A stretch of 64,000 bases of DNA from positions 124,001 through 188,000 of the IMG/VR virus record IMGVR_UViG_3300037010_001227; one strand, 5' to 3'. Positions 1 through 18,493 of this stretch are shown here, piece after piece (position 1 is the stretch's first letter; every line of letters starts with the position of its first letter). The notes beneath the pieces were generated by a model. It saw only the letters and a program-made list of their open reading frames with translations. It was not told the DNA's origin and ran no database searches. A program made the translations under genes and the position numbers.

Positions 1-486
1 TTGATCCTTGTAGTGAGAGAGTGTGGGAACACAACAAGACAGTGGTTATTTAAATAGAATTGCAGCATCTTCTATAAGATGTATGAATGCAAAACAATGT
101 TAAACACTTTCTATAACTACGCCAGGAAAGTGTTAGGAAGTATATTTGGCGTAGATAAACAATCATTCTATAGGTGTTCTATGAATTGCAGTAATTGTGG
201 TTCTGAACTGATTTATAACGCTGGTTACGCATGGAATAGTAAGAAACTCTGTGAGGCTTGTTTTCACAATGAGTATTCGAGTGTGATTTCCCTTAAATTT
301 AAAAGTAACCAGTGCCAGGATACATCCGACACGCTTGTACTGCAATCTGAGACTAGGAGATAACCTAGTGTGATTGGAAGTTTTGAAACGGAGAATTATG
401 CGAGCGACAATCACACATGCAGAGACTAACTGTAATCTGCGCTTGGTTGAAGTAAGAGTAAATGGGTTTCTACAGGAGAATAACTA

Positions 487-696
487 ATGCCAAGAGGAAA
501 CGAAAAGTTTAAACCCGTCTTAAAGTTTGCACTGGTTGTTGATCCTGACGGGAAAGAACCAGATATTGAAGTTTTTGATACCCTTAAAGAACGCTGTGCG
601 TATGTTAATGTATTGAGGTCAATTGATACTCCATATATATTGTTTCCATCTCCTGCTGTTAGTTTTGAGATGGCTAATTATGAAGAGTTAGCTTAG
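487..696 (+). CDS. hypothetical protein (early-region small ORF)
   Basis: SD AGGAG upstream of ATG; followed directly by hairpin 693-741. Confidence 0.7.
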   Translation: MPRGNEKFKPVLKFALVVDPDGKEPDIEVFDTLKERCAYVNVLRSIDTPYILFPSPAVSFEMANYEELA

Positions 697-741
697 TTCT
701 TTAGCATCCAGATTCTTAATATCTGGATGATAAATAACTAA
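693..741 (+). repeat. intergenic imperfect hairpin, family member 1
   Basis: TTAGTT-CTTTAG-CATCCAGAT / 7-nt loop / ATCTGGATG-ATAAAT-AACTAA, overlapping the stop codon, no U-tract. Confidence 0.7.
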
Positions 742-864
742 CACAAAGAAGGTAAGCTAGTTAAATTAGCAAAAAGCAAAGAATAGAACCATCAACAGAA
801 GTATTAGTTCTGAGATGGATTGGTTAGAGGATAATTACTACCCACCCACCATACGGAGGATAGA

Positions 865-1221
865 ATGCTCTATCTAGTAACAATTCCTATTCCTAATTCC
901 TACGGGGATGGAGTTTTCGAGCAACCTTATTATTTCAGTGCTGACAAGTTTCCTTCTTGGGAGACAATCAAAACTGAAATTAAGAAGCTACATGAACGGG
1001 ATCTTAATTATCCTGAATATCGTGGTTGTCACGATCATGCACTATACACACTGAAAATGGCAGAAATGAAAAAGATTGAATTGCCGAGATTATGGGGCAA
1101 TCTCTGTCAATCTGCGGTTCCTTACGAACATGCGTGTGGTCATAGTTTTATTTCTGCAAGATCTATTCGACCTATTGTGGTCGAAGAACCTGTTGCAGAG
1201 ATGCAAATGTATTCTGTGTAA
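865..1221 (+). CDS. hypothetical protein
   Basis: SD GGAGG upstream; 118 aa ORF. Confidence 0.75.
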   Translation: MLYLVTIPIPNSYGDGVFEQPYYFSADKFPSWETIKTEIKKLHERDLNYPEYRGCHDHALYTLKMAEMKKIELPRLWGNLCQSAVPYEHACGHSFISARSIRPIVVEEPVAEMQMYSV

Positions 1222-1258
1222 ACAGGATATTCCACATAGTAGTTGTGATAACAACTGA

Positions 1259-1309
1259 TACAGATTATTCAGCACATTCTCTTAGGATGATGTGCTGTAT
1301 TAATTTGTA
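1259..1309 (+). repeat. intergenic imperfect hairpin, family member 2
   Basis: TACAGATTA..CAGCACAT / ATGTGCTG..TAATTTGTA, directly before SD GGAGG. Confidence 0.6.
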
Positions 1310-1474
1310 GGAGGATGTATGGACGTTCTCGTTATCTACCGTATATTGACTGACTTTAGGCAACTACAATTAGACATTCTGGAGGTAGAAGTAACAGATG
1401 TTAAAGCTGAATTTAATGAAAGAAAAGAACAGTTAAAGAAACGGCATCCACAACAAGAAGAATAGGAGGCAGTT

Positions 1475-1738
1475 ATGAAACTGCATATCTATCAAATCGA
1501 CAAGAAAGAATACACCAGAGATTTAGTTGCACTTCTTACAGTATCCTTGAGGATCATGTTTAATGATTCTCTTGAACTGGAAGAAGTAACTAAGACTTGC
1601 ATTACCGCTACAATCAAACACCTTGGTTTTCAAGAAGAGGATGAGTATTATCTTACTGAGATGTTAAGCAATGTAACTGGAACTGATAACCTGACATTGA
1701 TCTTAACAGAACAGACTGAGGAACAACATGTGGCATAG
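1475..1738 (+). CDS. hypothetical protein
   Basis: SD AGGAGG; 87 aa. Confidence 0.7.
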   Translation: MKLHIYQIDKKEYTRDLVALLTVSLRIMFNDSLELEEVTKTCITATIKHLGFQEEDEYYLTEMLSNVTGTDNLTLILTEQTEEQHVA

Positions 1739-1864
1739 AAACCCAAATGTTTATAGAAAGGAACCTTATTGGTATTGTAATCCTACCTTTAGAGTATCCT
1801 TTCTACTCTCTACACTAAGCATATTAACGTTCTTTGGAATGTATTTATTACTGCGGTAACCAAT

Positions 1865-1941
1865 GGACCCTTAGCTCAGTTGGTTAGAGCATTTCCCTTT
1901 TAAGGAAGTGGTCATCGGTTCAAATCCGATAGGGTCCACCA
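1865..1941 (+). tRNA. tRNA-Lys(UUU)
   Basis: Acceptor GGACCCT/AGGGTCC, D-arm GCTC..GAGC, anticodon loop CTTTTAA, T-loop TTCAAAT, encoded CCA. Confidence 0.95.
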
Positions 1942-1964
1942 ACTCTTTCTTTCAGGAGGATGTT

Positions 1965-2327
1965 ATGAAACGTCTACTTGGACACGAAACACGAGAAACT
2001 GCATACGTGGTAGATGATTACCCGTATGGTTTCAGGCTTCGTTGTAAGATTCGTTACTGGATCGAGCATCGAAAGGGATTTGGTTTCAGATTTTGTAGTC
2101 AGACTACAAATCCTAAGAAGTCGGGAGAAGTGTGGAACAAAGAAAAATGTGGAACATATAGTGATGGTATTCATCTGATGTATTTGGATGATGAAAATCA
2201 TGTTGTGTACGATTGTTGTTCCTGGTATTTTAAGAACTATTGTCAGAGTTTCTTGGATAAATACAAAGAGATCCTCACACCAGCAGAAATCATTCTGTTA
2301 GAAGCATTCATTTCACGTTGTGAGTAG
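1965..2327 (+). CDS. hypothetical phage protein
   Basis: SD AGGAGG then ATG 1965; the track start at 1908 lies inside the tRNA. Confidence 0.75.
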   Translation: MKRLLGHETRETAYVVDDYPYGFRLRCKIRYWIEHRKGFGFRFCSQTTNPKKSGEVWNKEKCGTYSDGIHLMYLDDENHVVYDCCSWYFKNYCQSFLDKYKEILTPAEIILLEAFISRCE

Positions 2328-2338
2328 GATACACTTCT

Positions 2339-2393
2339 AATCTGTTGAAGGATGGACTACAAGTAAGTTTTGTAGTCCATCATTGAATAGATT
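2339..2393 (+). repeat. intergenic imperfect hairpin, family member 3
   Basis: AATCTGTTGAAG-GATGGACTACAA / GTAAGTT / TTGTAGTCCATC-ATTGAATAGATT. Confidence 0.8.
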
Positions 2394-2565
2394 TAAAGGA
2401 GAGAAATCATGACTTGTGCTGGATGCAAGAAACCTATTACCGATACTAGGTACTCTGGTGAATACAAGGGTAAATCATACTGTAAAGCTTGCAATAAGAA
2501 GTTAGCAAGTAATCTGGTTAATAAATTAGCAACACTTAAGAAAAAATAATTCCTATGGAGGAAGT

Positions 2566-2796
2566 ATGTTTCTGTCGCAAGATGAAATCAAACAGAAGAT
2601 TGTTGATATGATTCAACAATTCAACGAAGAAACCTCCGAGGAGGGTTTACTACGATTCTACAACGAGCATGTAATAGAAGGGACAGAAGAACCTTTGAGT
2701 AGTGAGGAGTTTCAAGACTACCTTATTGCTCTTTACATTGACAACAGAATAACCTGGAACAAATATGGATTATTGACAGTTGTAACAAGTATTTAG
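2566..2796 (+). CDS. hypothetical protein
   Basis: SD GGAGG; 76 aa acidic. Confidence 0.7.
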   Translation: MFLSQDEIKQKIVDMIQQFNEETSEEGLLRFYNEHVIEGTEEPLSSEEFQDYLIALYIDNRITWNKYGLLTVVTSI

Positions 2797-2843
2797 TATC
2801 TAATCCAGGTAATAATGGTATTACCTGTCTCTGGAGAAACAAA

Positions 2844-3212
2844 ATGAAAAATGTTACTATTGATTTTTCAATCAGGAATTGCATTATTGAAATACTTCGT
2901 GGTCTTCAGATGCCAACGAATTACAGAGTGCTTTTGGAGTCTTCAGCAAAACATAATGAAGTAGCCATTGTGTTTGAACGCAAGACAGGATTCTATTTCA
3001 AGTTCAATGGAAAGAAATACTATATTCCCTTTGCATCTTGGTGGGTTCCTGAAAGAACCATTACAGAATACTGTTATGAAGATTTGCTTGAAAAGATTTG
3101 TAAATATCCAATGCTATTGGAAACAACGGTAGTAATTGAAAACAACAAAGTTTTACCATTCCGGTATTCTACTGTTGTTGTTAAGCAAGAAGATAAAGCT
3201 GTTGAAGCTTGA
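2844..3212 (+). CDS. hypothetical protein
   Basis: SD GGAG; 122 aa. Confidence 0.7.
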   Translation: MKNVTIDFSIRNCIIEILRGLQMPTNYRVLLESSAKHNEVAIVFERKTGFYFKFNGKKYYIPFASWWVPERTITEYCYEDLLEKICKYPMLLETTVVIENNKVLPFRYSTVVVKQEDKAVEA

Positions 3213-3257
3213 TCTCTTTATCGACTGGCTCTAAAACAGCCAGTCTATTAAGGAGAT
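3212..3257 (+). repeat. intergenic imperfect hairpin, family member 4
   Basis: ATCTCTTTATC-GACTGGCT / CTAAAAC / AGCCAGTC-TATTAAGGAGAT; 3' arm contains the next SD. Confidence 0.75.
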
Positions 3258-3260
3258 TCC

Positions 3261-3560
3261 TTATATAAGCAGTATAAAATAGAAACAAAAGAAAAAGAAA
3301 TTGAAGTATTAGATACTATTACTTGTGATAACTGTAAGAAAATCTTTCATAAAGAAGAAGATGTCTGGGAATATCAAGAAATGCTACATTGGGAAATGAG
3401 AGCAGGATATGGTGCTAAAGTATACAATGATGGAGATGAATTATCTCTTGATCTATGCCAGCACTGTGTTAAGACATTACTTGGTAATATAGTAGTAAAT
3501 CATGGTAATGCTTACTTCCCAGATAGTGATGAAGAAGCTAAACATTTTCAAGAGTATTGA
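3261..3560 (+). pseudogene. Zn-finger-type ORF lacking a canonical start near its SD (CDNC...CQHC)
   Basis: Open frame LYKQYKIETKEKEIEVLDTITCDNCKK...GYGAKV...LDLCQHCVK...* after SD AGGAG 3251-3255; no ATG/GTG/TTG at SD distance; absent from the ORF track. Confidence 0.55.
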
Positions 3561-3597
3561 AATAGATTAACAAGAACACGTAATAGGAATCACGAAA

Positions 3598-4074
3598 TTG
3601 GTTAGAACTCGACCCTTCGATATTAATAAACTTAAAGTTCATCATACAGCTAAGTTTCATCGGCTGAAACAAAAGCAAAGAAACATTAGGTTTAATGTGT
3701 GGAAACGAAAGTTGTTTCGTGATTGGCAGAAAGAACATCAAGGTAAATTACCTGATCTATCAGTAATTCCAGACAACTGTGATTACTGTTACACTTGCAC
3801 TGATGAAGTTGATAGAGTAATTGATTTTGAAGGAATACCATATACCTTGTATAAATACAAGATGTGTGATTATTACTATAAGATTGAAATACCAGAAGCT
3901 GAACGTGAAAGTCATGATGGAATAGTTGCTTGTGGACAAACTTACATCGGTGGTTGTCATCTACTAAAGAAAACAGATGATGATTTCAAAGGATGGGGTT
4001 TGTTGTGGGATGGATGTAAAGAATGCTCTCTTAAAATGCACAAAGATGTCTCTGGAGAATACGATGAGAGATGA
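3598..4074 (+). CDS. Cys-rich hypothetical protein
   Basis: 158 aa ORF with several Cys pairs (CDYC, CKEC). Confidence 0.65.
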   Translation: MVRTRPFDINKLKVHHTAKFHRLKQKQRNIRFNVWKRKLFRDWQKEHQGKLPDLSVIPDNCDYCYTCTDEVDRVIDFEGIPYTLYKYKMCDYYYKIEIPEAERESHDGIVACGQTYIGGCHLLKKTDDDFKGWGLLWDGCKECSLKMHKDVSGEYDER

Positions 4075-4221
4075 AAACACTTTGATTGATTCTGGATATG
4101 GTTATGGTTATTGTCCAGAATGTCATGCTCCTGGAATTAAAAGAGAACGAAAACCTGATGGAAATGATATGTGTGTAAATTGGCATGTGTATCCTTCAAC
4201 AACGGCTCTAAAGGAGTCCAA

Positions 4222-4557
4222 ATGACAGACCCAATAAATCTTCACCTTGCATTAACTGCTTGTTTCTGTTCTATCAAGCAGATTTTGAGTTATAACACTG
4301 ATGACATTGTGAGTAATGCTACCAGTGAGAAGTTTGATTCAGACACAAGAAAGGCTATCTCTTATATAAGAGATAAAACTTCTTCGATTGAATATATTTC
4401 TAGAGAAACTGTAGTTTTCTTACTCAGAAAATATTACAGAGAAGAACATAACAGTGAAGGTGAAAACTTCGCAAAAGTCTTTGATTGCATGTTTACAAAG
4501 CTTAGTGTGGATACTTTTTACTGGGGATGTGTAGAATTAAGTAGTGAAGCTCAATAG
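4222..4557 (+). CDS. hypothetical protein
   Basis: SD AGGAG then ATG 4222; stop codon falls inside the 5' end of tRNA-Ile. Confidence 0.65.
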   Translation: MTDPINLHLALTACFCSIKQILSYNTDDIVSNATSEKFDSDTRKAISYIRDKTSSIEYISRETVVFLLRKYYREEHNSEGENFAKVFDCMFTKLSVDTFYWGCVELSSEAQ

Positions 4558-4623
4558 CTCAGTTGGTAGAGCAAGGCACTTATAACGCCTAGGTCGATGG
4601 TTCAATCCCATCTTGAGCTACCA
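4548..4623 (+). tRNA. tRNA-Ile(UAU)
   Basis: Acceptor AGCTCAA/TTGAGCT, D-arm GCTC..GAGC, anticodon loop CTTATAA, T-loop TTCAATC, discriminator A, CCA. Confidence 0.9.
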
Positions 4624-4671
4624 GAGTAATCTCCTAATAGTAGTAGAAAAGTTACACTTCCTGGAGGAGTC

Positions 4672-4956
4672 ATGTCTAAGGTAGTTAATATCTCAGTTGA
4701 CTATATTAAGCTCAACATTAAAGTTGGCTTTGAGATTACCTCGGACGATCAAATCAAGTTGGCAGTTGTTTCCCCAGTTAAACATTGTTGTAGTAGAAAG
4801 TTAACATCTTTAATGGATGTGGCTAAACATCTCCATTTAGAAGAGAAAGATCACCCAACGTTTATCAGTTTGTTTGATTCTGATAGATCAGAAGGAACAC
4901 ATTTCGTAGTTAAAGCACCTCGAATTGAATGTGACTATAATCATATGGGGAGTTAA
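4672..4956 (+). CDS. hypothetical protein
   Basis: SD GGAGGAG; 94 aa. Confidence 0.7.
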   Translation: MSKVVNISVDYIKLNIKVGFEITSDDQIKLAVVSPVKHCCSRKLTSLMDVAKHLHLEEKDHPTFISLFDSDRSEGTHFVVKAPRIECDYNHMGS

Positions 4957-5186
4957 GATGATGGAACCAGAAGAATATAAAGATAGTAGATGCACAACAA
5001 TTGAAATTACTTCTGTCCAATACAGTGATTTCATGGTTGATTATTACAAAAAGAAAAAAGAGTATCCAACTTATAGAGTTGGACAACATTTCTGTAACAT
5101 GTTCCATATGCATAATCCTGAACTGTTTTATAAACGTGACTTTCAGGATTGTTTAAAATATATCCTAGAGAACTATGTTGTTGATT

Positions 5187-5241
5187 AGTTTCTTTATGGC
5201 AACGATTACACACTTAGTCTAACCGTTGCAATAAGCAAACT
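5187..5241 (+). repeat. intergenic imperfect hairpin, family member 5
   Basis: AGTTTCTTTATG-GCAACGATTA / TAACCGTTGC-AATAAGCAAACT, starting in a stop codon. Confidence 0.6.
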
Positions 5242-5446
5242 GAATTAACTTTATACTTTAGAAAGGTTATTCTAATGGCTACGGCCCAAAAATTCATTGA
5301 TCGTAATTTCTCTTTGTCTGAACATGATGATTTTCAGGTAAACATCCTACCCTTAGTTAATGATGGTAATGAACCTGTAGAATTGTTAGATGAAGATCAA
5401 AATTTAATCGGATGGGTATTGAAAAGGCTATAACCTGGAGGGTTAT

Positions 5447-5725
5447 ATGAATTTCTATGTGGTATCGTTAGTCAATGGAGAGTCTGGTTCGGAAATATTA
5501 GGGACCACAACAGATTCTTTAGATGATGCAGAAAGTGTTGCTATTGACTTTTTGTCTGAATACTTGATTGAAGGTGATACAATCAAGAAAATAAAAAGAG
5601 ATTCAGACTTTTCTTCAGACTCAGATATAGAACAGATTTATACAATTCAACATTATGATTTCACATACCATTTTATGGAAGTAAGAGTATTAAAAAGAAA
5701 TCATAATAAAAATCTTTACAGTTGA
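5447..5725 (+). CDS. hypothetical protein
   Basis: SD GGAGG; 92 aa acidic. Confidence 0.7.
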   Translation: MNFYVVSLVNGESGSEILGTTTDSLDDAESVAIDFLSEYLIEGDTIKKIKRDSDFSSDSDIEQIYTIQHYDFTYHFMEVRVLKRNHNKNLYS

Positions 5726-5858
5726 AAGTCTTTTCAATACAGATAATAACTGTAGTTGTTAGAACAAAAACATAATAGTTTCGATGTAGAACATAATCAA
5801 CTTTAATGATAACATCATTTAAATGACGGTGCTTTCAGTAGTCCTGAAAGGAGGGCAT

Positions 5859-6203
5859 ATGAATACCTTAGCAAGAGAGTTAGCTATGGCATTTCTAGAA
5901 AATAGGCCCTTGAAATTGAAGGATACAATTGTAACCATGACTGAATATGTTCTTGGTGGAACAACAATTGCTAAATGGGATAGTTCATCTCTATTGGTTA
6001 TTTTTCCACAAACAAATATTAAATTAGTTAAAGACCGAGTAAATCCTATCTTAGAAGGATACGGTTGTGGTATTTCAATCGAATCTTTCCAACAAAGACT
6101 ATACTTCGTAGACAACTCTGACAAACAAAGAAGTTTAAGAGAAGTCGAATTTGAAGTGTGGTATTTGATAAAAAAAGATGGATTTATCTTAAGAAACTAT
6201 TAA
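5859..6203 (+). CDS. hypothetical protein
   Basis: SD GGAGG before ATG 5859 (track start 5823). Confidence 0.65.
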   Translation: MNTLARELAMAFLENRPLKLKDTIVTMTEYVLGGTTIAKWDSSSLLVIFPQTNIKLVKDRVNPILEGYGCGISIESFQQRLYFVDNSDKQRSLREVEFEVWYLIKKDGFILRNY

Positions 6204-6240
6204 ATAGTCCGATATAAGTATATGAAGGTGTTTCAAACTA

Positions 6241-6327
6241 CCCAGCATGGCGTAATTGGTAGCCGCAGAAGTCTTAAAAACTTCTTCCTGTAAAGGAGTC
6301 CCGATTCGACTTCGGGTGCTGGGACCA
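6241..6327 (+). tRNA. tRNA-Leu(UAA)
   Basis: Acceptor CCCAGCA/TGCTGGG, anticodon stem GAAGT/ACTTC with loop CTTAAAA, long variable arm TCCT-GTAA-AGGA, T-arm CCCGA-TTCGACT-TCGGG, CCA. Confidence 0.9.
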
Positions 6328-6333
6328 GTAGAA

Positions 6334-7044
6334 TTAGGAGTGTCTTTTGATATGCTGTCTTATAGCATTATCAGACACTCCTAATTCTTTTCCTAGTTTA
6401 GTATAGCCAACAAGCTCTAAACGAGTTAATAATTCTGGTAGTGATGGCCAGGTAATTTTGGTTGCTATTAATTTACCAGCACATCGTTTACATCTAGTGG
6501 AGTTTCTAGCAATTTTAGTATTACAGTCCAAGCAATAGTTAATAATTGGCTCTTTTATTAGAGATGTTTTAACTTTAGCAAGATTTTTATTCTTCTTATT
6601 CTTACCACGATATGTATCTGTGAGAGCATGGCAATTAGGACACAGTAAAGTAAGATTGCTTAGAGCATTATTTAGATGGTTTCCATCTATATGTTCTAAC
6701 TCAAGAGGAATAGGATTATTTAACCACGTTGTTTGATTACAGTTATAACATTTGTAATCAAGCAAGTTTTCTTTTATTAATCGTAATTTTAGTTTGTGTG
6801 ATTGTATATAATGGTCATTAGATAAATATTCGTGAATATCGCGTTTCGGTTTAAATGTTTTTCCTTTATTAGAACCTTTTCCTAATAAATGTGTTGTATC
6901 TAATTGTAGTCGTGTAATAGCAGCGGCAAGGCAGTCGTAATTTCCTCCTGCTTGTGCCAATCCCAACTTACCTAATATCTCACGTTTAGATACAGATGTT
7001 TTGACAGCTTCGATAAGTTCTTGATCCGTATATCTTCGAGTCAT
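6334..7044 (-). CDS. HNH homing endonuclease (intact)
   Basis: CYNC...LELEHIDGNHLNNALSNLTLLCPNCH; second Zn ribbon (CLDC..CKRC) and C-terminal HTH; SD GGAG before ATG 7044; ends 6 nt from the tRNA-Leu 3' end. Confidence 0.9.
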   Translation of the reverse strand: MTRRYTDQELIEAVKTSVSKREILGKLGLAQAGGNYDCLAAAITRLQLDTTHLLGKGSNKGKTFKPKRDIHEYLSNDHYIQSHKLKLRLIKENLLDYKCYNCNQTTWLNNPIPLELEHIDGNHLNNALSNLTLLCPNCHALTDTYRGKNKKNKNLAKVKTSLIKEPIINYCLDCNTKIARNSTRCKRCAGKLIATKITWPSLPELLTRLELVGYTKLGKELGVSDNAIRQHIKRHS

Positions 7045-7345
7045 ATGCTCTCCATATAATTTAATTACGGTAAAGACTTTATCCAAACTGTCAGTATATT
7101 TACCGTAGGAGATTATCATGACAACCTCAGAGTTAATCAAAATAATGAGGGAGTTAGATAGCTCTCATAACAAACTAAACAATCTGTTGGCTAATCTTAC
7201 TGTAGCAGCTATAACTAGAAGCTACGTAAATATTAAACTAAAAGCGCAAATGATTTGATTTTGGAGTAGATCATGCATGAATTATCCAGCTAATTCTTTT
7301 AATAGATAATGAACTGTATTAATTTATGTCACATTTGGAGGTTAC

Positions 7346-8167
7346 ATGCTAAAGAATAGTAAAGACCATCCATTTAATACTACAAGAGAACTAGTTAACT
7401 TTCTTGGTTGGTTTCAGACAGGGTTCTTTCAAGATCAGATGAGGTATGGTAATAAAAGAGGCGATCCAGAACTAGTAGAAGGATTTTTAGTGTTGGGTTT
7501 AGATGCCTTTAATGTTCTAGTTTGCTACGATTTAGTAGAGATTGGAACATATAATAGAGTTGCTCCTAGACGTAAAGATGTATTTAGAACGTTAGTTGGT
7601 GTAAAAGAAGTTGTAGTTGTTGTGGTAGTTCACAATCATCCTGATGGCGATCCTACTCCATCTAATGAGGATATGGAACTAACACGTAACTACAGAGAAA
7701 TAGCTGGTATCCTTGGATATATCTTTAAAGACCATATCATTATTGGTCGAACTTCAAGTGTATCTATTACAGAGAATAACAAATACATGATGGGTGGTGA
7801 AGTTATTTCCTTGTCACCAAACAAACCCAAATCAGTAGTAACAACAGAAGTATTAGAAAATTCAGAAACACCAAATATTATCACATTCGATAGGCGGCAA
7901 AAACCTAGAGATATGATAACAACCAAAGAACAGGGAATTAGCAAACCACAATTTCCTCCTGATTGGATAGATGGAAAACCACCAGGATGGGAACCTGATA
8001 TGGAAATTCCCGTTATATATAACGGAACTATTTGCTGTTCTGCTACAAAGATAGGTTTCTGGGGACATATGCTAACAATGCAAGTCCCTGCTCCAGATTG
8101 GAAACCTTGGGATAACTCAATGGTGAAGAAACTAAAACGTAACGGAGGTAAACCATATGAGCTGTAG
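7346..8167 (+). CDS. RadC-like JAB/MPN domain protein with C-terminal extension
   Basis: HNHPDGDPTPSNED and DHIIIG motifs of the RadC/JAB family. Confidence 0.85.
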   Translation: MLKNSKDHPFNTTRELVNFLGWFQTGFFQDQMRYGNKRGDPELVEGFLVLGLDAFNVLVCYDLVEIGTYNRVAPRRKDVFRTLVGVKEVVVVVVVHNHPDGDPTPSNEDMELTRNYREIAGILGYIFKDHIIIGRTSSVSITENNKYMMGGEVISLSPNKPKSVVTTEVLENSETPNIITFDRRQKPRDMITTKEQGISKPQFPPDWIDGKPPGWEPDMEIPVIYNGTICCSATKIGFWGHMLTMQVPAPDWKPWDNSMVKKLKRNGGKPYEL

Positions 8168-8627
8168 AAGCTCAAGTTATCCAAACAATATCTTCGATCC
8201 AATGAGAATACAGTATCATATTGTAGCTCTTGCTGGTATTGCCAGAGTTCAGATTCTGGGTTACAAGGAGTACAACAATGTTCTTTGTAATATGATTGTT
8301 TCCAGTTTGGAAACCGCAGAACGAACTCTTCAAACAGACCCAATGCGCCATCAAGATGTTCTTGATGCATTGGATGCACTTCAACTCTTAATTGAACCTA
8401 TGGTTCAATTAAGACGTAGTTTCGTATTAGCCAAAGATGCTGATAATCTCTTAAAAGTTATGGGCATCTGCCAGTTATTAAATTCTTTAATTGTTCTGAC
8501 TGAAGTTTTACATACTCTTTCTCATCACAATGACCATAAAGATGTGAATAATTCCAGTATGGAGTTATTTAGAGTTCAAATGGACCTCATCTTTAAGGAG
8601 TTAGGTATTGGTATTGACGCCGAATAA
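8157..8627 (+). CDS. hypothetical protein
   Basis: SD GGAGG; overlaps the previous stop. Confidence 0.65.
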   Translation: MSCRSSSYPNNIFDPMRIQYHIVALAGIARVQILGYKEYNNVLCNMIVSSLETAERTLQTDPMRHQDVLDALDALQLLIEPMVQLRRSFVLAKDADNLLKVMGICQLLNSLIVLTEVLHTLSHHNDHKDVNNSSMELFRVQMDLIFKELGIGIDAE

Positions 8628-8975
8628 GTTCAGTTAATATAACCCGAGTGATAATACTATCACTCTTCCTAAGAGGTTACATCATGAGCGAGGATAATGG
8701 CAATGCTGCCAAGTTCCTAAAAGCAGAGTATCGTCGAGATGATATTTGGACGTTGATTCCAGGTAATCGTCTTCCTGACAACAAGAACAATAGAAAGAAA
8801 CTAAAGGATCTTTTGGATGAATTTACCAAAGATTCTAAGTTTCAAGTCCGAATCGTTCTTTATGAGGTTACAGAAAAACCTCTTGAAATCTTGTTCGGAG
8901 AAGGCGCTGGAACTATCTTTCAATAACCCCAAGACATTAAAAATAGTGTCGATTTCCAAAGAAAGGAAATAAAAA

Positions 8976-9206
8976 ATGAATGAAACGAAAATCCTTGCAG
9001 AGGCCAAGACTGAACCACAGATTTTCTGGATGCTTCTGGTGGAAGGAACTGGAAGTTGTTCCGCAAAACATTTTACCCAGGAAGCAGCGGAAAAAGAGTG
9101 CGAGCGTCTTGCCAGAGTATCTGGTAAGAAGGTTCACATTCTAAAGACTGTGGGAAGTATGGAACTGGAACGGATTCTTCCTCCTGTACTATTCACGAAA
9201 TACTAG
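8976..9206 (+). CDS. hypothetical protein
   Basis: SD AAGGA; 76 aa. Confidence 0.7.
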   Translation: MNETKILAEAKTEPQIFWMLLVEGTGSCSAKHFTQEAAEKECERLARVSGKKVHILKTVGSMELERILPPVLFTKY

Positions 9207-9208
9207 TA

Positions 9209-9259
9209 AATCTTCTGAAGGTAGTAGCTGCTAATCCCAGCTACTACATTGAGTAGATT
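9209..9259 (+). repeat. intergenic imperfect hairpin, family member 6
   Basis: AATCTTCTGAAG-GTAGTAGCTG / CTAATCC / CAGCTACTAC-ATTGAGTAGATT. Confidence 0.8.
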
Positions 9260-9374
9260 GAGATTGTAATGAAAATAAATTGGAAGTTTCATAATTAAGC
9301 CTTATGAAACTTCTAATGATTTATAGAATACACGGAATAGTTAATAAGGGATATCGACTCCCTGGGAGGTAGTT

Positions 9375-10058
9375 ATTAAGATAATTTCGAAGTTTCATGA
9401 CTACTACGATAGCCTGGTAAATTTTGGTGGAAGTGATAACACTAAAGTATACAATAGAACTACGTATACTTTGGAATCCTATCAATTTCCTCCGAATCAT
9501 AATAAAAGACTACCTGACTTGTATTTAATGTTTGATGGTCATAGATTTGTTTCTTCTTACTATTACAGCAAGAATAATAACGTTAAAATTGAAAGTTTTG
9601 TTGTTATCTTTACTGGTATCTCTTATACTGGAATCAGAGTAGAATTCATTAAGCCTGAACAAAGTGAAATAACTTACCATTACACTTTCGAAAGTCTTTT
9701 TAAGTATCTCAACAATATTGATCCTACTATTATTGAGAAACAAAAGAAACCTTTCATAGAGTTTTATGAGGGCAACAAATCTGAGTGTGCAAGAGATTGG
9801 GCAATCAACAACAAGATTATCATCGCTACTGATTGCACTGGACTTGGTAGTAGAAATACTTGGATTGCTAATCCTCAACTAGATAAGATTAGCTTTCAGA
9901 AAGTTCTTGATCCTTTCACAGCATTTCAAGAGTTGGAAATGTGGATTGGTGGAGTTCTGACTGATAACAAAGAGATCAGTCAAGTTTCCAATGATATTAG
10001 AATTCAGCAAGCTGGATTTGATCTTAAAACATCTTTCAGAAAACCAAAACAGTTTTAA
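9375..10058 (+). CDS. hypothetical phage protein, probable ATT start
   Basis: SD GGGAGG 9364-9369, in-frame ATT 9375 (IKIISKFHDYYDS...), continuous with track ORF 9471-10058. Confidence 0.65.
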   Translation: MKIISKFHDYYDSLVNFGGSDNTKVYNRTTYTLESYQFPPNHNKRLPDLYLMFDGHRFVSSYYYSKNNNVKIESFVVIFTGISYTGIRVEFIKPEQSEITYHYTFESLFKYLNNIDPTIIEKQKKPFIEFYEGNKSECARDWAINNKIIIATDCTGLGSRNTWIANPQLDKISFQKVLDPFTAFQELEMWIGGVLTDNKEISQVSNDIRIQQAGFDLKTSFRKPKQF

Positions 10059-10106
10059 TCTATTGAAAGATGGACTAATTAATTTTTAGTCCATCATTGA
10101 GTAGAT
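10058..10106 (+). repeat. intergenic imperfect hairpin, family member 7
   Basis: ATCTATTGAAA-GATGGACTAA / TTAATTT / TTAGTCCATC-ATTGAGTAGAT; ends 2 nt before the tRNA-like gene. Confidence 0.8.
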
Positions 10107-10108
10107 AT

Positions 10109-10191
10109 GTGCCGTTAGCCGATTTCGCCTTCTAAGCGATTATTCGTAGTTGGAGCTGCAAACGGGGGTTCGAGTCCCTCACGGCACACCA
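10109..10191 (+). tRNA. atypical tRNA-Arg(UCU)-like RNA lacking the D-arm
   Basis: Acceptor GTGCCGT/ACGGCAC+ACCA; anticodon arm TCGC-CTTCTAA-GCGA; T-arm GGGGG-TTCGAGT-CCCTC; too few nt for a D-arm; extra stem GTAGT-TGGA-GCTGC. Confidence 0.75.
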
Positions 10192-10291
10192 GTTCTTCTA
10201 AATGTCATGGAGTATTATTTTTGAACTATACGCAAGGATGCTGTATTTAGTTTTTTATAGGCGAAAACCAATTAAGTCTTTAAGGAGTCAT

Positions 10292-10699
10292 ATGAAGAAA
10301 TTTCTGATGCTGATGTTGTTAATGTGTAGTGGTTATTCGTTAACAGCACCAACAACAGTGAACCAGCAAGAACCTGCTGGAGTAGTCACTGAAACTCTCC
10401 AAGAAGTTAGAACTGGAACTATCTCTTGGTATGGTCGTTCTTCCCATGGAAGAAAGATGGCTAATGGTGCTCTGTTTGATATGTATAAATTCACCTGTGC
10501 TCATCCTTACTTTCCATTTGGAACGATGCTATTAATTAAAGAAGCTACTACTGGTAACTCAGTAGTAGTGGAAGTCACTGATAGAGGGCCTTTCGTAAAA
10601 TCAAGAATTTTAGACCTCTCTTATAGTGCAGCCAAGGCCCTTGGTATAATAACAGCAGGAACAGCCAAAGTTACCGTATTTTTAATTACGAAACCATAA
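10292..10699 (+). CDS. rlpA: RlpA-family (DPBB) lytic transglycosylase with signal peptide
   Basis: ISWYG..HGRKMANG..TCAH..PFGT..VTDRGPF..RILDLS; hydrophobic N-terminus; SD AGGAG before ATG 10292. Confidence 0.9.
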   Translation: MKKFLMLMLLMCSGYSLTAPTTVNQQEPAGVVTETLQEVRTGTISWYGRSSHGRKMANGALFDMYKFTCAHPYFPFGTMLLIKEATTGNSVVVEVTDRGPFVKSRILDLSYSAAKALGIITAGTAKVTVFLITKP

Positions 10700-10919
10700 C
10701 AATTACATATTCTGGAGGGGTTATGAAATCCCACGCTAAAGCGCATGTAACTACCAGAAAACATTACAAATACAAAGTAGCGCAAGCATTTGGAATGCTT
10801 TTTCTACAACTAACAGATATGATGAATCCAGAGAGGTCAGTATCTCTCCGAATACTTCATAAACATGTGCGTAGGAAGGATTTAATATATACTCTGCACA
10901 GGCTGTTAACAATGCCGTG

Positions 10920-10971
10920 ATCTTTTTATATACAGTAGCTCTTCTAGTGCGAGCTACTGCAATAAGAAGAT
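10920..10971 (+). repeat. intergenic imperfect hairpin, family member 8
   Basis: ATCTTTTTATA-TACAGTAGCTC / GAGCTACTGCA-ATAAGAAGAT. Confidence 0.7.
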
Positions 10972-11011
10972 TTTGGAAATCTAATGGTAGTTTTCCATTG
11001 TGGAGGTTAAA

Positions 11012-12448
11012 ATGGTTATGGACGTTGAAACCGTTGAAACGTCTGATAGGTTCAAGATTTTGTCAAACGAAACTGAAGTGATTCAGTCTATCATCAAACA
11101 TTGCAGCATTATTCTGGTTAAACCAGTTCAATCTGGTAAGACCAGTGATGTGTTCAAGATTGTTGAAACAACTTATAAGAACTCTGCTACTATCTTTGTA
11201 TCAGATAAGAACTCTGCATTGGCAGGACAAACTAATGTTCGAGCTAAAATTCAAGGTTTCACCGTTTTGAATTTCAATGAAGCCACAAGAAAAGAACGTG
11301 GCGGAATCATTAATGATTTGCCTAAAAGTGTGGGAAAAAAGAAGATTTTTCACTTTTTGATGGAAGTTAATAACTTGGATTTGTTGTATGCTATCGTTCT
11401 TAGTGCAACTTATCCAATAACTCTTATTATTGATGAAGGTGACAAAAACAGGAACGTTGCAGACTTTGAAGAGTCTGATAATGAAGGTAATAATCTTCCT
11501 ATTATCACAAGAAAACTTCTTACCATCAAGAATAGGCTCAAAAAGCGTGAAGATGGAAGTAAAGTTATCTTTGTTACAGCAACTCCTCAAAGTCTTCTGG
11601 TATCTGAAAAAGATCCAGACAGATTGGTTGTTTACAAAGAGCCTTACAAAAATTATATTGGAGCAGGATTGGATCATGAACCTGATGTTGAAGTAATTCA
11701 TGCAATCAGAACTAATCCAGTTCCTGCAAGTGAGCGATGGTCTAACAGTTCCTGGGATGTTTCAAGTAATAGTTTCAGGCATGGTGTGGACATTGCAATT
11801 GACAAATTCAAAAATCTTGGAACAAAAGATCCTACCGTAAAACAAATTCTACTCATCTCTCTTGAAAGCAGAAATGCTTCTCAATCAAAGATGGGTGAAT
11901 TTGTTAAAGAATGCCTGCAAGATAACGAAGATATTGACATCATCATCTTTAATGGGGAGACTAAAAAGAAACAGAATTTTCTACTTTCAGACCTCATCGG
12001 TTTTTCCAAGAAACGAAAGATTGTAATTATCGCTGGTTTTATGGCAGCGCGGGGAGTGTCTTTCACGGATTTTAGTGACCCAGAAAACAAATACGAACTT
12101 GTTATACAGGTTCACAATACGAAAGAACAAGATCCATTGAACTCTTCGTTGCAGGCAATGCGTATTTTTGGACCTGCAAGAAGAACTGTTACAAGACCAT
12201 TTATGATTTGTAACAGTATTTGCGCACAAGATTTACGATACAATTTTGTAGAATGTTATCGAGTTATCCATGACTTAGCATTGGGACTTCCCAGTATTGA
12301 TCGTGGAGCCTATGACATTTCAAGGCCTTTAACACAAAAATACAACTTCAGGTATATGTTGCAATCCAGTTATGGGAGAACTCTCTTGTTTGAATCTCCC
12401 AAAGAAGAGGATCACATGCCAGTAAACACTTGGGGTTCTGATCTATAA
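11012..12448 (+). CDS. SF2 helicase-like ATPase resembling Z1-domain-associated proteins
   Basis: Walker A PVQSGKT, Walker B IIDEGD, motif III VTATP, C-terminal IAGFMAARGVSF and LQAMRIFG. Confidence 0.7.
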   Translation: MVMDVETVETSDRFKILSNETEVIQSIIKHCSIILVKPVQSGKTSDVFKIVETTYKNSATIFVSDKNSALAGQTNVRAKIQGFTVLNFNEATRKERGGIINDLPKSVGKKKIFHFLMEVNNLDLLYAIVLSATYPITLIIDEGDKNRNVADFEESDNEGNNLPIITRKLLTIKNRLKKREDGSKVIFVTATPQSLLVSEKDPDRLVVYKEPYKNYIGAGLDHEPDVEVIHAIRTNPVPASERWSNSSWDVSSNSFRHGVDIAIDKFKNLGTKDPTVKQILLISLESRNASQSKMGEFVKECLQDNEDIDIIIFNGETKKKQNFLLSDLIGFSKKRKIVIIAGFMAARGVSFTDFSDPENKYELVIQVHNTKEQDPLNSSLQAMRIFGPARRTVTRPFMICNSICAQDLRYNFVECYRVIHDLALGLPSIDRGAYDISRPLTQKYNFRYMLQSSYGRTLLFESPKEEDHMPVNTWGSDL

Positions 12449-12472
12449 CAACTTTTTGCGAGGATGCTTTAA

Positions 12473-12685
12473 GTGAGTAATCTTCTGGGAAGTTTCAAGT
12501 TAAGCCAAATAATTGTGAACTTCGGTCTTAGAACCTCTGAGGCTGACGCGAAGTGTAGTATCAGAAATGGAGTAGTTGCAGTAAACGGAAAGACCGAAAT
12601 CAATCCTGAAAAAGAAATTTCATTAGTAACACTCAACGAACTGAAGTGCGGAAAGCACCTCATTGTTCTCAACCGTTCCAACTAA
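12473..12685 (+). CDS. stand-alone S4-like RNA-binding domain (TyrRS C-terminal-like)
   Basis: GLRTSEADAKCSIRNGVVAVNG...KCGK matches the S4 pattern GL..S..EA...I..G.V.VNG...GK. Confidence 0.6.
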   Translation: MSNLLGSFKLSQIIVNFGLRTSEADAKCSIRNGVVAVNGKTEINPEKEISLVTLNELKCGKHLIVLNRSN

Positions 12686-12897
12686 CTGGAGGCTATATGG
12701 AAATGGTAAAAGTCTTTGTTGAAACCATCGGAAACATTGGTGAGTTTCCACGAGGAGCAGACGTTCATGGGTCTATTTATCGTATTATTGCTGGGATGCA
12801 AGTTACACATCCTGGGGATCGTCTGAACTATGTTGTTATTGATAGCAGAGGAAACAGAGTTGGTGCTGGTAGTTTAGCTTTTTAAATACATATTTGT

Positions 12898-12934
12898 AAA
12901 GCCTAGTATCCATTTCGGATACTAGGCTTTTTTT
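12898..12934 (+). terminator. Rho-independent terminator
   Basis: GCCTAGTATCC/GGATACTAGGC 11-bp stem + T7. Confidence 0.85.
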
Positions 12935-13530
12935 ATGTCTACTCTTCTGAGGTGAAAATGAATTTGAAACCTAATTTTACTTATCCTAGAATTGGTGCAA
13001 AAATTAGAATCATTGGAGATGGTTTTAATGCTGACCGATATGGATATTACCTTGAAAAAACAGAAACTGGTCAATTGGTATTGGATATGGACCCAAACAA
13101 TATTTTTCCTCCAGATCGTAAGAAAGAAATTATTAATGTTTGGGACAACTTTGAAGTAATCTAATTGGAGATATAATGTATAATAATTCTTCGTAGTATT
13201 AATACTACTATTTTCTTTCTGATTGCTCAGTATAAGAAGGTTCTAAATGGCATTTCTAATAAGTGGTTTGAGAGTAAAGTAACTAGTTCCCAAAAATACT
13301 AAAGATACTTGGAAAACAAAGCAGATAGATGTCATTAATCCAATTCCTGCAAACCTATAGGTACTCCTGAAATTCCCATAATCAAGTGACAAAATGTAAC
13401 TTCTGCTTGTTATGCCATTTAGTTATAAAAGATCCCATGTGAATGAAATAAGATATAACAGTAGAAGAATAACTCAATAACACTGAATCGGAGTCTTTCA
13501 TTAGGCTTCGATTCAATTTTAGGAGCTAAC

Positions 13531-17483: not shown

Positions 17484-17828
17484 ATGATTACTCTTTATTC
17501 CAAATGGCCTTATAAGAGAACTAAGGCCACCCGAGTTCTTTTCTGGCAAGTAGTGAATAATGAAACTGGTCTTACGATGAAGATCATGAATCTAGCTGAG
17601 TTTCTTCGTGATACTGGTATTGTGGTTGATTATAAGAAGTTGGTAAAATCGATATATAGAAATAATAACTTCACAAATCTTGAAGAGTTCTCAATTTATC
17701 GGATTCTCAAAAACAGAGAGTTTGATACTACTTTTGAAGTAGTAACAAAACGTAAAATTCGTAGGGATAAAGTAACTGGTAAGAAAACCTATAGACATCT
17801 TACTCTTCGTAATGGTGTAATTTCGTAA
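17484..17828 (+). CDS. basic hypothetical protein
   Basis: SD GAGG; translationally coupled to rnc (TAATG). Confidence 0.7.
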   Translation: MITLYSKWPYKRTKATRVLFWQVVNNETGLTMKIMNLAEFLRDTGIVVDYKKLVKSIYRNNNFTNLEEFSIYRILKNREFDTTFEVVTKRKIRRDKVTGKKTYRHLTLRNGVIS

Positions 17829-18493
17829 TGCTGTCAACAATTATAACAAAAGAATCTCTAAGTAAAGCTAACGACTTAATTACACAAGCACTGGTTCATC
17901 AGTCATATGCTTTTGAGCATAAAGTGGAATCTAATGAGCGGTTAGAACTACTTGGAGATTCTGTTATTTCTCTTCTATGTATTAACTATCTGTATGAAAA
18001 ATATCCTCAATATGATGAAGGAGAACTCACTCAGATTAAAACATACATGGTAAATGGTAAACAACTATCACTTATAGGAGAGAAATTAGGATTAGACAAA
18101 CGAATCAAACTCGGAACAGGAGAAGTTCTTAGTTCTAAAACAGTGGGCCGTGCTTTTGAAGCTCTTATTGGTGCGTATTATTTGAGTATGGGCTTTGAAA
18201 GCACTAAAAAATGTCTTAACTTGATATTTGATCAGTTAGATTCTGGTCAAATTGAACAAATTCTTTATAACTACAAAGGGGATTTACAAAAATACTCTCA
18301 ATTGAAGTTTAAAGAAGATCCGCACTACGAAGTAACAAAACAAAGTGGACAACCACATAATAGAGAGTATACCGTAAAGGTTACAATTAAAAGCAATAAA
18401 ACGCTTACTGGAATCGGTTCAGGAAAAAGTAAGAAAGAAGCTGAACAACAGGCTGCAAAAACCCTTCTAGCCATATTGGAGAAGAAGCAATGA
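17828..18493 (+). CDS. rnc: ribonuclease III
   Basis: ALVHQS, signature NERLELLGDSV, FEALIGA, C-terminal dsRBD (YKGDLQ...GQPH...GKSKKEAEQQAA). Confidence 0.95.
   Translation: MLSTIITKESLSKANDLITQALVHQSYAFEHKVESNERLELLGDSVISLLCINYLYEKYPQYDEGELTQIKTYMVNGKQLSLIGEKLGLDKRIKLGTGEVLSSKTVGRAFEALIGAYYLSMGFESTKKCLNLIFDQLDSGQIEQILYNYKGDLQKYSQLKFKEDPHYEVTKQSGQPHNREYTVKVTIKSNKTLTGIGSGKSKKEAEQQAAKTLLAILEKKQ

What the first reader, a model, noticed from the sequence alone, without database searches (positions are those of the whole stretch)
693..10971. Family of eight internal-loop hairpins between early genes, in a phage that carries its own RNase III
Seen: 46-55 nt hairpins at 693, 1259, 2339, 3212, 5187, 9209, 10058 and 10920 share one architecture. 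Each has an outer stem (often ATCT...AGAT), an internal loop, an 8-12 bp inner stem and usually a 7-nt loop. Three share flanks ATCT-x-x-TGAA and ATTGA-R-TAGAT while their inner stems co-vary (GATGGACTA/TAGTCCATC versus GTAGTAGCTG/CAGCTACTAC), which indicates selection on structure. Most start in or just after a stop codon, none has a canonical terminator U-tract, several end at the next SD, and one ends 2 nt before the tRNA-Arg-like gene. Established: T7 early mRNA is cut by host RNase III at intergenic internal-loop hairpins. Inference: the phage RNase III (17828) or the host enzyme processes a polycistronic early transcript at these sites. An alternative is that they are recombination or cassette-shuffling elements.
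Basis: partly seen in the sequence, partly recalled or inferred. Interest (0 to 1): 0.75.

Follow-up and report, generated by a model that had tools for sequence, protein, structure and literature searches.

The report
Conserved hairpins between early phage genes
A family of roughly 50-base RNA hairpins sits directly after stop codons between the first genes of an uncultured 213-kb phage and its relatives; they are built like the sites where phage T7's early messenger RNA is cut by RNase III, but no transcript data exist to show that they are cut.

Summary
All eight hairpins fold as described. Four more lie just upstream of the window, making 12 in 12.7 kb. A covariance model finds no copy elsewhere in the 213-kb genome. 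Each has about 20 bp: a conserved outer stem, a small internal loop about 10 bp up, a variable inner stem and a 5-12 nt loop. Eight of 12 start inside the upstream stop codon, a Shine-Dalgarno sequence often follows, and none has a U-tract, although the genome uses ordinary U-tract terminators elsewhere. The same family occurs in at least nine uncultured relatives, with compensatory changes at 16 of 18 pairs. A hairpin is kept upstream of one conserved gene while its sequence turns over. G-U pairs favour the sense RNA strand. The T7 R0.5 region folds to the same plan. My best reading is intercistronic RNA processing or stability signals of the RNase III type (about 0.4). The link to the phage's own RNase III is weak. 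That gene has only three close homologues, found on short contigs, is absent at the syntenic place in relatives that carry hairpins, and is atypical. No RNA data were listed, so cleavage is untested. I class it as a new member of a known kind.

The parts
693..741 (+). family hairpin; its 5' base overlaps the stop codon of ORF 487-696
   Evidence: Fold -19.1 kcal/mol, z -5.9. R1 37.1 bits, E 5e-4 genome-wide. Stop-codon overlap.
1260..1308 (+). looser family member (subtype TTATTCAGC / GCTGTATTAA); AGGAGG and ATG follow at once
   Evidence: Fold -24 kcal/mol, z -5.0. Not recovered by R1. Same subtype as L027:8745 in a relative.
2339..2395 (+). family hairpin, subtype A (TGAARG / CATTGA with G.G and R.A mismatches); SD starts 3 nt after it
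   Evidence: Fold -30.2 kcal/mol, z -7.1. R1 44.3 bits.
3211..3260 (+). family hairpin, subtype B (TTATCGA / TCTATTAA, 2x3 internal loop); starts in stop codon TGA; AAGGAG lies in the 3' arm
   Evidence: The same subtype occurs 7 times in L004 and twice in L018.
5185..5243 (+). family hairpin; starts in the stop codon of ORF 4961-5188; one of the few that fold better on the minus strand
9209..9259 (+). family hairpin, subtype A, with a different inner stem from 2339 and 10057
10057..10107 (+). family hairpin, subtype A; starts in stop codon TAA and ends 2 nt before the tRNA-like gene
   Evidence: (46.9 bits, the best hit).
10919..10972 (+). family hairpin; starts in stop codon TGA; 40 nt upstream of the conserved helicase-like gene
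   Evidence: A hairpin holds the same position in L004, L005, L018 and L025/L027 with unrelated sequence.
10109..10188 (+). tRNA-Arg(UCU)-like gene with a reduced D arm and a long extra arm
   Evidence: Rfam RF00005 at 32.1 bits against a gathering score of 29. ARAGORN does not call it.
11012..12448 (+). conserved helicase-like gene (Walker A, DExD-like motif); used as the anchor to find relatives
   Evidence: 79 homologues, several on contigs of about 225 kb. Alignment A1.
12898..12930 (+). first canonical intrinsic terminator (14-bp G+C-rich stem plus T-run) downstream of the hairpin cluster
17828..18493 (+). phage RNase III gene (class 1: nuclease domain plus dsRBD), an atypical form
   Evidence: Pfam and PDB hits. 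E37, E40, D44, E64 and E111 are kept. It has a 5-aa deletion of the TGGRxR loop and R108 where bacteria have D or N.
9279..9317 (-). perfect 16-bp hairpin, not a family member; probably the terminator of the small minus-strand ORF 9321-9485
   Evidence: I9. Terminator-like on the minus strand. No R1 hit.

Best explanation
The hairpins are cis-acting structures in the sense RNA of a long early transcription unit. They most likely act as intercistronic processing and stability signals of the RNase III type.

Proposed course, with shown and inferred steps marked:
1. Host RNA polymerase starts in the 700-bp repeat-rich non-coding region at genome 120.86-121.56 kb. It reads rightward through about 45 small genes and five tRNA or tRNA-like genes to the first U-tract terminator at window 12898. 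This is inferred from gene orientation, the absence of terminators in between and the absence of a phage RNA polymerase.
2. At 12 junctions the RNA folds into a helix of about 20 bp split by a small internal loop. The folding, covariation and strand bias are shown.
3. A double-strand-specific endonuclease cuts at or near the internal loop. This would be the host's RNase III, supplemented in this lineage by the phage's own enzyme. Cutting would divide the transcript into modules of one to nine genes. It would leave a protective 3' hairpin on the upstream piece and release the downstream SD or tRNA. This is inferred by analogy with T7.
4. The stop codon lies in the 5' base of the helix, so a terminating ribosome must open it. 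Cutting or occlusion may therefore depend on translation of the upstream gene. This is speculative.
For: - Structure under selection: 83.9% of cells are paired against 60.7% in shuffles. Sixteen of 18 pairs have compensatory changes. The covariation score is 0.583 against 0.203 for shuffles and at most 0.194 for slid controls.
- The family is shared by at least nine uncultured relatives.
- A hairpin is kept 27-40 nt upstream of the conserved helicase-like gene in five lineages with different sequences.
- Sense-strand RNA: there are 68 G-U pairs against 20 A.C mismatches. 29 of 35 hairpins are more stable as plus-strand RNA. A U.G pair is the commonest state at one outer-stem position.
- Size: 18-27 bp in 35 hairpins, against 12-15 bp for this genome's U-tract terminators. 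RNase III substrates typically have two helical turns, and internal loops limit cleavage to one strand and leave a protective 3' hairpin (PMC1540722).
- Direct comparison: the T7 0.4/0.5 junction (R0.5) folds into an 8-bp lower stem, an internal loop, a 10-bp upper stem and a 5-nt loop, with the UGA stop in the 5' base and the SD after it. T7 also has three tandem promoters and one terminator bounding the unit.
- Here there are three tandem repeats of about 101 bp upstream and a first terminator at window 12898.
- The cluster is confined to this unit.
- A phage RNase III gene is present.
- T7 raises host RNase III activity through its kinase (PMC4858673 abstract), so boosting this activity is a known phage strategy.
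Against: - There are no transcript data. No RNA run was listed, so neither the single transcription unit nor any cleavage is shown.
- The host is unknown, so its RNase III rules cannot be applied.
- The phage RNase III is confined to close kin and is missing from relatives that have hairpins. It has R at the D/N site and a loop deletion, so its activity is uncertain.
- Three of 12 own hairpins fold better on the minus strand.
- The strand-bias sample was ascertained partly on the plus strand, and its members are related copies.
- Helix length and internal loops are necessary features of RNase III substrates but are not specific to them.
Confidence: 0.4

Rival explanations
1. The hairpins are uncut RNA elements. 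They would act as barriers to 3'-5' exonucleases, as REP hairpins do in bacterial operons, and/or as devices coupling termination of the upstream gene to initiation of the next. In this reading no endonuclease is involved.
For: - Eight of 12 start in the stop codon, and an SD follows within 0-25 nt in most.
- In several members the purine-rich 3' arm is itself AAGGAG with a start codon 3-8 nt later (window 3211, L010:14976, L020:9523, L018). Opening by the terminating ribosome would then free the SD.
- The RNA-level evidence fits this reading equally well.
Against: - SD sequestration holds for only a minority. In most members the SD lies outside the helix.
- Two hairpins precede tRNA or tRNA-like genes rather than ORFs.
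- A uniform length of about 20 bp with a conserved mid-helix loop is not needed for an exonuclease block.
Confidence: 0.2
2. The hairpins are transcription attenuators or terminators without a U-tract, like the stem-loop part of T4-type PeSL elements. They would grade the expression of successive early modules.
For: - They are intergenic, on the sense strand, stable and directly after stop codons.
- The stem-loop of an RB49 PeSL reduced downstream reporter expression as strongly as rrnB T1 (PMC2839356).
Against: - None has a T-run in the 10 nt after the stem.
- The same genome uses classical terminators with T-runs, including on this strand at window 12898, 14217 and 21670, so its polymerase reads the ordinary signal.
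- The stems are A+U-rich and interrupted.
- Twelve efficient terminators without intervening promoters would silence the distal genes, including the conserved helicase-like gene. No sigma-70-like promoter accompanies the hairpins.
Confidence: 0.15
3. The hairpins are DNA-level linker repeats that promote recombination and gene-cassette shuffling in a hyperplastic early region. This would be PeSL-like or MITE-like, and any RNA structure would be incidental.
For: - Near-identical copies occur within one genome: L004:4892 and 5963; genome 122850 and 123118; the shared inner stem of window 2339 and 10057.
- They flank small ORFans whose content differs wholly between relatives.
- Strain variants lacking window 1949-2322 end 16 nt before hairpin 2339.
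Against: - None of the three deletions seen joins two hairpins.
- The element has no promoter.
- The genome has no RAYT transposase or integrase.
- The subtype-A motif has no convincing copy in 596 Gb of prokaryote genomes or in IMG/VR.
- Compensatory changes and the G-U bias point to selection on the folded sense strand.
- This role could nevertheless coexist with an RNA function.
Confidence: 0.1
4. The hairpins are binding or cleavage sites for another, unidentified RNA-binding protein or nuclease encoded by the phage or the host. That protein would recognise the conserved outer stem and purine mismatches.
For: - The outer stem and internal loop are conserved in sequence while the inner stem varies: subtypes A, B and D/E each have fixed mismatches such as G.G, R.A or A.C plus G.U.
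- This suggests sequence-specific contacts, unlike the mostly sequence-neutral recognition by bacterial RNase III (PMC1540722).
Against: - No candidate protein was found.
- Several subtypes with different loops coexist in one genome, which would call for several proteins or for loose recognition.
Confidence: 0.1

Closest known systems
RNase III processing sites of the phage T7 early region (R0.3, R0.5, R1, R1.1, R1.3)
   Same: - Both are hairpins of about 50 nt between cistrons of an early unit read by host polymerase, with a lower stem, internal loop, upper stem and small loop.
- In both, the stop codon can lie in the 5' base and the SD follows shortly. This was shown for R0.5 by folding NC_001604.
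- In both, the sites form a sequence family within one genome.
- Both have tandem repeats or promoters upstream and a single terminator downstream.
   Different: - In T7 the conserved part is the upper stem and the 4x5 loop. Here it is the outer (lower) stem and a 1x1 or 2x3 loop, and the upper stem varies.
- There are 12 sites in 12.7 kb against 5 in 7 kb.
- Cleavage is proven for T7 and untested here.
- T7 boosts the host enzyme through a kinase, whereas this phage carries its own rnc gene.
Bs-RNase III sites in the early mRNA of Bacillus phage SP82 (Panganiban and Whiteley 1983; recalled from memory, only cited indirectly in PMC4838370)
   Same: A small family of mutually similar intercistronic hairpins in the early transcripts of a large myovirus, cut by host RNase III.
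   Different: I could not retrieve the SP82 sequences or paper here, so no direct comparison was made. The host and the phage lineage are unrelated.
PeSL (promoter-early stem-loop) cassettes of T4-type phages (PMC2839356, PMC4122927)
   Same: - Both are repeated intergenic elements containing a stem-loop, lying from the stop codon of one small early gene to the SD of the next.
- Both occur in a region of variable ORFans of a phage with a T4-type capsid (gp23 hit).
- Both have near-identical copies within a genome.
   Different: - A PeSL is defined by a strong sigma-70 promoter with an AT-rich upstream element. None is found here, and there is often no room for one, with 10-20 nt from hairpin to start.
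- PeSL stems are short and rich in G/C runs. These stems are about 20 bp, A+U-rich and interrupted.
- The indels seen here do not join two elements.
REP/BIME and other repeated extragenic palindromes of bacteria (known from the literature)
   Same: Both are imperfect palindromes repeated between genes of operons. They fold in mRNA and can stabilise the upstream cistron.
   Different: - REPs are chromosomal, occur in hundreds of copies in both orientations and are linked to RAYT transposases.
- Here there are 12 copies in one transcription unit and no RAYT.
- No copies were found in prokaryote genomes.

Membership tests
T7-type RNase III processing signal | double helix of about two turns (about 20-22 bp) | tested here: met
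   18-27 bp in 35 family members, most at 18-23. The rule is taken from PMC1540722.
T7-type RNase III processing signal | internal loop or bulge dividing a lower stem from an upper stem | tested here: met
   A 1x1 or 2x3 loop lies 9-11 bp from the base in all members. T7 R0.5 folded with the same tool gives 8 bp, a loop and 10 bp.
T7-type RNase III processing signal | lies between cistrons on the sense strand of one polycistronic early transcript | tested here: inconclusive
   The intergenic position and the sense-strand bias are shown. The single transcript is inferred only from the lack of terminators or promoters between genome 121.5 kb and window 12898.
T7-type RNase III processing signal | cut by RNase III in vivo or in vitro | not testable with these tools
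   No RNA run was listed.
PeSL cassette (T4-type phages) | sigma-70-like -35/-10 promoter with an AT-rich upstream element inside the repeat | tested here: not met
   Promoter-like sites are not above the shuffle expectation, and none sits at a hairpin. The TTGAA...TAGAT of subtype A is spaced 32 nt apart.
PeSL cassette (T4-type phages) | indel breakpoints between related phages fall in the repeats | tested here: inconclusive
   Three strain deletions were seen (1948>2323, 3289>3865, 4630>4790). One ends 16 nt from a hairpin and none joins two hairpins. The sample is small.
Intrinsic (rho-independent) terminator | G+C-rich stem followed by a U-tract | tested here: not met
   No T-run follows any of the 12. 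The scan lists none of them as terminator-like, while it does list window 12898 and 14217.
REP/RAYT or MITE | cognate Y1 (RAYT) transposase, or many dispersed copies in cellular genomes | tested here: not met
   PF01797 is absent from the genome. The 14 matches to the subtype-A pattern in 596 Gb of genomes have no comparable inner stem and fold weakly (0 to -12.3 kcal/mol).
Integron attC-type cassette site | tyrosine recombinase (IntI) and R''/R' core sites | tested here: not met
   PF00589 is absent. There is no GTTRRRY core in the arms.
Any curated RNA family (Rfam 15) | match to a covariance model | tested here: not met
   Only tRNAs matched in window 1-13000, even at E <= 1.
Class 1 RNase III (the protein at 17828-18493) | RNase III domain with the signature NERLExLGD, plus a C-terminal dsRBD | tested here: met
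   Pfam PF00636/PF14622 plus PF00035. NERLELLGD is present. E37, E40, D44, E64 and E111 are invariant across 121 homologues.
Class 1 RNase III (the protein at 17828-18493) | acidic or amide residue three positions before the EA(L/I)IGA glutamate, and an 18-aa loop | tested here: not met
   R108 stands where 111 of 121 sequences have D or N. The loop is 13 aa instead of 18. Both traits are found only in the four phage-clade proteins. The effect on activity is unknown.

The most novel reading that the evidence does not exclude
The hairpin family and the trimmed phage RNase III (5-aa loop deletion, R at the D/N site) form a private, virus-owned RNA-processing system. The enzyme would have co-adapted to the conserved outer stem and purine mismatches. 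Cleavage would be gated by the ribosome terminating on the stop codon built into the helix base, so that each early module is released or destroyed according to whether its upstream neighbour is being translated. It could also yield small RNAs from the excised stems.
Probability: 0.1. Interest if true: 0.7.

Novelty: new member of a known kind. Interest (0 to 1): 0.45.

Why it matters
If the hairpins are cut, this would extend T7-style RNase III punctuation of early messages to a deep, uncultured lineage of roughly 225-kb myoviruses. It would provide a ready-made set of natural substrate variants: three or more internal-loop types, each with freely varying upper stems. It would also offer a rare case of a phage carrying its own RNase III next to a plausible substrate set, which makes enzyme-substrate co-evolution testable. 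More practically, the covariance model marks the early transcription unit and module boundaries in metagenomic phage genomes that otherwise have no annotation.

Tried and rejected
- DNA and protein searches of cultured phages (INPHARED) found nothing close. There was no DNA match and no match to the helicase-like protein. The capsid protein is at most 27% identical.
- A single-protein search of IMG/VR found no relative.
- The subtype-A pattern gave only chance matches without an inner stem in IMG/VR (3 hits) and no convincing copy in 596 Gb of prokaryote genomes (14 hits). A bacterial repeat origin is therefore not supported.
- For RNA evidence, no RNA run was listed. The DNA runs are microbial-mat and sediment metagenomes.
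- Whole records of relatives could not be searched, so rnc absence is shown only for the loci I held.
- Host inference through a G+C-rich neighbouring gene found nothing.
- RNAalifold on the MAFFT alignment recovered only the outer stem, because inner stems differ in length. I set the pairing register by counting pairs.
- I rejected sigma-70 promoters inside the hairpins, U-tract terminators, RAYT or integrase-driven mobility, and a phage RNA polymerase with its own terminators. No multisubunit beta subunit was found, and the T7-type search was uninformative because its controls were silent. One sigma-70-family gene exists at genome 209646.
- Gene calls outside the tool's ORF lists come from my own crude codon-bias caller and should be treated as approximate.

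Full report
**Setting.** The window is bases 124001-188000 of a single 213,189-bp virus record with 34% G+C. CheckV estimates it at 95% complete. It was assembled from a microbial-mat metagenome.

- It encodes a gp23-type capsid protein, a tail sheath, a split family-A DNA polymerase, UvsW-like and DnaB-like helicases, and a ribonucleotide reductase with an intein.
- No multisubunit RNA polymerase was found. It has one sigma-70-family gene.
- No cultured phage is close.
- By my own gene calls, genes run leftward from 0.2 to 71.6 kb and almost all rightward from 118.8 to 211 kb.

**The observation.** All eight hairpins fold as described, at -17.6 to -30.2 kcal/mol and z -3.5 to -7.1.

- A two-strand scan of the whole genome found four more of the same build just upstream of the window, at genome 122262, 122850, 123118 and 123722. 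That makes 12 in 12.7 kb.
- The genome's other intergenic hairpins are mostly classical terminators: perfect G+C-rich stems of 12-15 bp flanked by A- and T-runs. Examples are window 12898, 14217, 21670 and 61422.
- The family members have 18-27 bp, are A+U-rich and interrupted, and have no T-run.

**Anatomy.** MAFFT alignment of 22 members gives a common outer stem of roughly AATCTnTTTA paired with TAAGnAGATT. A small internal loop follows, then a variable inner stem of 8-13 bp and a 5-12 nt loop. Subtypes differ in the loop region:

| Subtype | 5' / 3' motif | Loop feature |
|---|---|---|
| A | TGAARG / CATTGA | G.G and R.A mismatches two pairs apart |
| B | TTATCGA / TCTATTAA | 2x3 internal loop |
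| D/E | TTTTAG / TCAAGA | A.C mismatch next to a G.U pair |

These are documented.

- Eight of the 12 begin within the upstream stop codon, and the others begin 3-39 nt after it. The next SD or start usually follows within 10-40 nt.
- Two hairpins precede a tRNA or tRNA-like gene.
- Only about one junction in four carries a hairpin. The genes in between are tightly packed, so the hairpins delimit modules of one to nine genes.

**Specificity.** I built covariance model R1 from 22 members.

- Across the whole genome it gives no hit better than E = 0.6 outside genome 123116-134974.
- With the filters off it also recovers three untrained upstream members. It does not recover window 1259.
- The cluster lies between a 700-bp non-coding region holding three tandem repeats of about 101 bp and the first plus-strand U-tract terminator at window 12898.
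- Sigma-70-like promoter matches are not enriched, and none sits at a hairpin.

**Relatives.** The conserved helicase-like gene at window 11012-12448 has 79 homologues at 37-62% identity (plus the window's own protein), several on contigs of 180-238 kb. I fetched 24 loci around it.

- R1 finds 23 distinct sites in nine distinct lineages. Nine of those sites were not in the training set, and each of the nine scores better on the gene strand.
- On the MAFFT alignment, which was not fitted to the structure, 83.9% of cells pair against 60.7% in shuffles. Sixteen of 18 pairs show compensatory changes. The covariation score is 0.583 against 0.20 for shuffles (0 of 500 reach it) and at most 0.19 for slid partners.
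- The flanking small genes are almost never homologous between loci.
- Even so, a long hairpin sits 27-40 nt upstream of the helicase-like gene in the window, L004, L005, L018 and L025/L027, with different sequences and even different subtypes. This is positional conservation with sequence turnover.

**RNA or DNA.**

- Across 35 hairpins there are 68 G-U pairs and 20 A.C single mismatches.
- 29 hairpins fold better as plus-strand RNA than as minus-strand RNA, by a mean of 3.5 kcal/mol (Wilcoxon p = 1.6e-4).
- One outer-stem position is U.G in 12 of 22 members.
- Caveats: the relatives were screened on the plus strand, the copies are related, and three of the 12 own hairpins prefer the minus strand.

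**Comparison with T7.** In NC_001604 the early unit runs from promoters A1-A3 to terminator TE.

- Its intercistronic regions fold into mutually similar hairpins.
- The 0.4/0.5 junction gives an 8-bp lower stem whose 5' arm contains the UGA stop, a 4x5 internal loop, a 10-bp upper stem and a 5-nt loop, followed by the SD.
- The cleavage position I recall from the literature (1468) falls in the 3' side of that loop.
- This is the same plan as the present family.
- PMC1540722 states that E. coli RNase III substrates typically have two helical turns. It also states that internal loops restrict cleavage to one strand, leaving a protective 3' hairpin.

**The phage RNase III.** Window 17828-18493 encodes a class 1 enzyme.

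- It has only three close homologues (96, 88 and 53% identity), all on short contigs. Below that it is about 42% identical to assorted bacterial enzymes.
- It is absent from 334 kb of relatives' loci, which include the syntenic 8-10 kb downstream of the helicase-like gene.
- E37, E40, D44, E64 and E111 are kept. The four phage-clade proteins alone lack 5 residues of the TGGRxR loop and have R where bacteria have D or N.
- The hairpin family therefore predates and outspreads the gene. If RNase III is the agent, the host enzyme is the general one.

**Cassette idea.** I laid the contigs of four metagenomes on window 1-6000.

- Strain variants lack 1949-2322 (the gene after tRNA-Lys, ending 16 nt before hairpin 2339), 3290-3864 and 4631-4789.
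- None of these deletions joins two hairpins.
- The genome has no RAYT transposase or integrase.
- PeSL elements are defined by a promoter (PMC2839356), which is missing here.

**Verdict.** The family is a real, selected, sense-strand RNA structure that marks an early transcription unit.

- I put RNase III-type processing or stabilisation first (0.4).
- Uncut stability or coupling elements come next (0.2), then U-less attenuators (0.15).
- Recombination linkers (0.1) and another RNA-binding protein (0.1) come last.
- Nothing here shows cleavage.

Noticed in passing
L001:17000-17412 (genome 121000-121412, just upstream of the window): Three tandem repeats of about 101 bp, plus a 31-nt repeat present twice, lie in a 700-bp non-coding stretch that precedes the rightward small-gene block. 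This may be a tandem early-promoter cluster like T7 A1-A3, or an origin.
   Followed up: partly
L001:18330-19795 (genome 122330-123795): The ribosome-binding motif CCTATGGAGG recurs six times directly after the first hairpins. At L001:19778 it is followed by ATG-TAG, a start-stop mini-ORF, 60 nt before tRNA-Leu(CAA) at L001:19854-19939.
   Followed up: partly
window 10109-10188: A tRNA-like gene scores 32.1 bits in Rfam, and its anticodon loop reads UCU (Arg). Its D arm is cut to about 5 nt and it has a 20-nt extra arm. ARAGORN does not call it, so it may not be a working tRNA.
   Followed up: partly
window 17828-18493: The phage RNase III and its three close homologues share a 5-residue loop deletion and an Arg at the D/N site before FEALIGA. 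No other of 121 homologues has this.
   Followed up: yes
window 14565-17828: An NAD-salvage pair (PnuC transporter 14565-15215, NadR-like 15584-16564) is followed by an AAA_33 kinase-like ORF (17010-17474). An unknown ORF (17484-17828) ends where the RNase III start codon begins.
   Followed up: no
window 1949-2322, 3290-3864, 4631-4789: Stretches missing in strain variants seen in other mat and sediment metagenomes. The first removes exactly the gene between tRNA-Lys and hairpin 2339.
   Followed up: partly
window 47695-47770: An isolated long hairpin of 29 bp with a 17-bp inner stem begins in the stop codon of the radical-SAM gene 46619-47701. Its outer arms resemble those of the upstream-most family members. 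Model R1 did not detect it.
   Followed up: no
window 6334-7119 (minus strand): This is one of the few ORFs on the opposite strand in the cluster, directly after tRNA-Leu(TAA). It is Cys-rich with only a weak HypA-like zinc-ribbon hit. It may be a homing-endonuclease-type insertion.
   Followed up: no
L001:16235-16872 (genome 120235-120872): A gene of about 50% G+C sits in a 34% G+C genome and ends in a 19-bp G+C-rich terminator, just before the repeat region. It looks recently acquired. The genome scan found no encoded relative in prokaryote genomes.
   Followed up: partly
L035:12897-16445 (genome 92897-96445): The ribonucleotide reductase large subunit is interrupted by a LAGLIDADG intein.
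   Followed up: no
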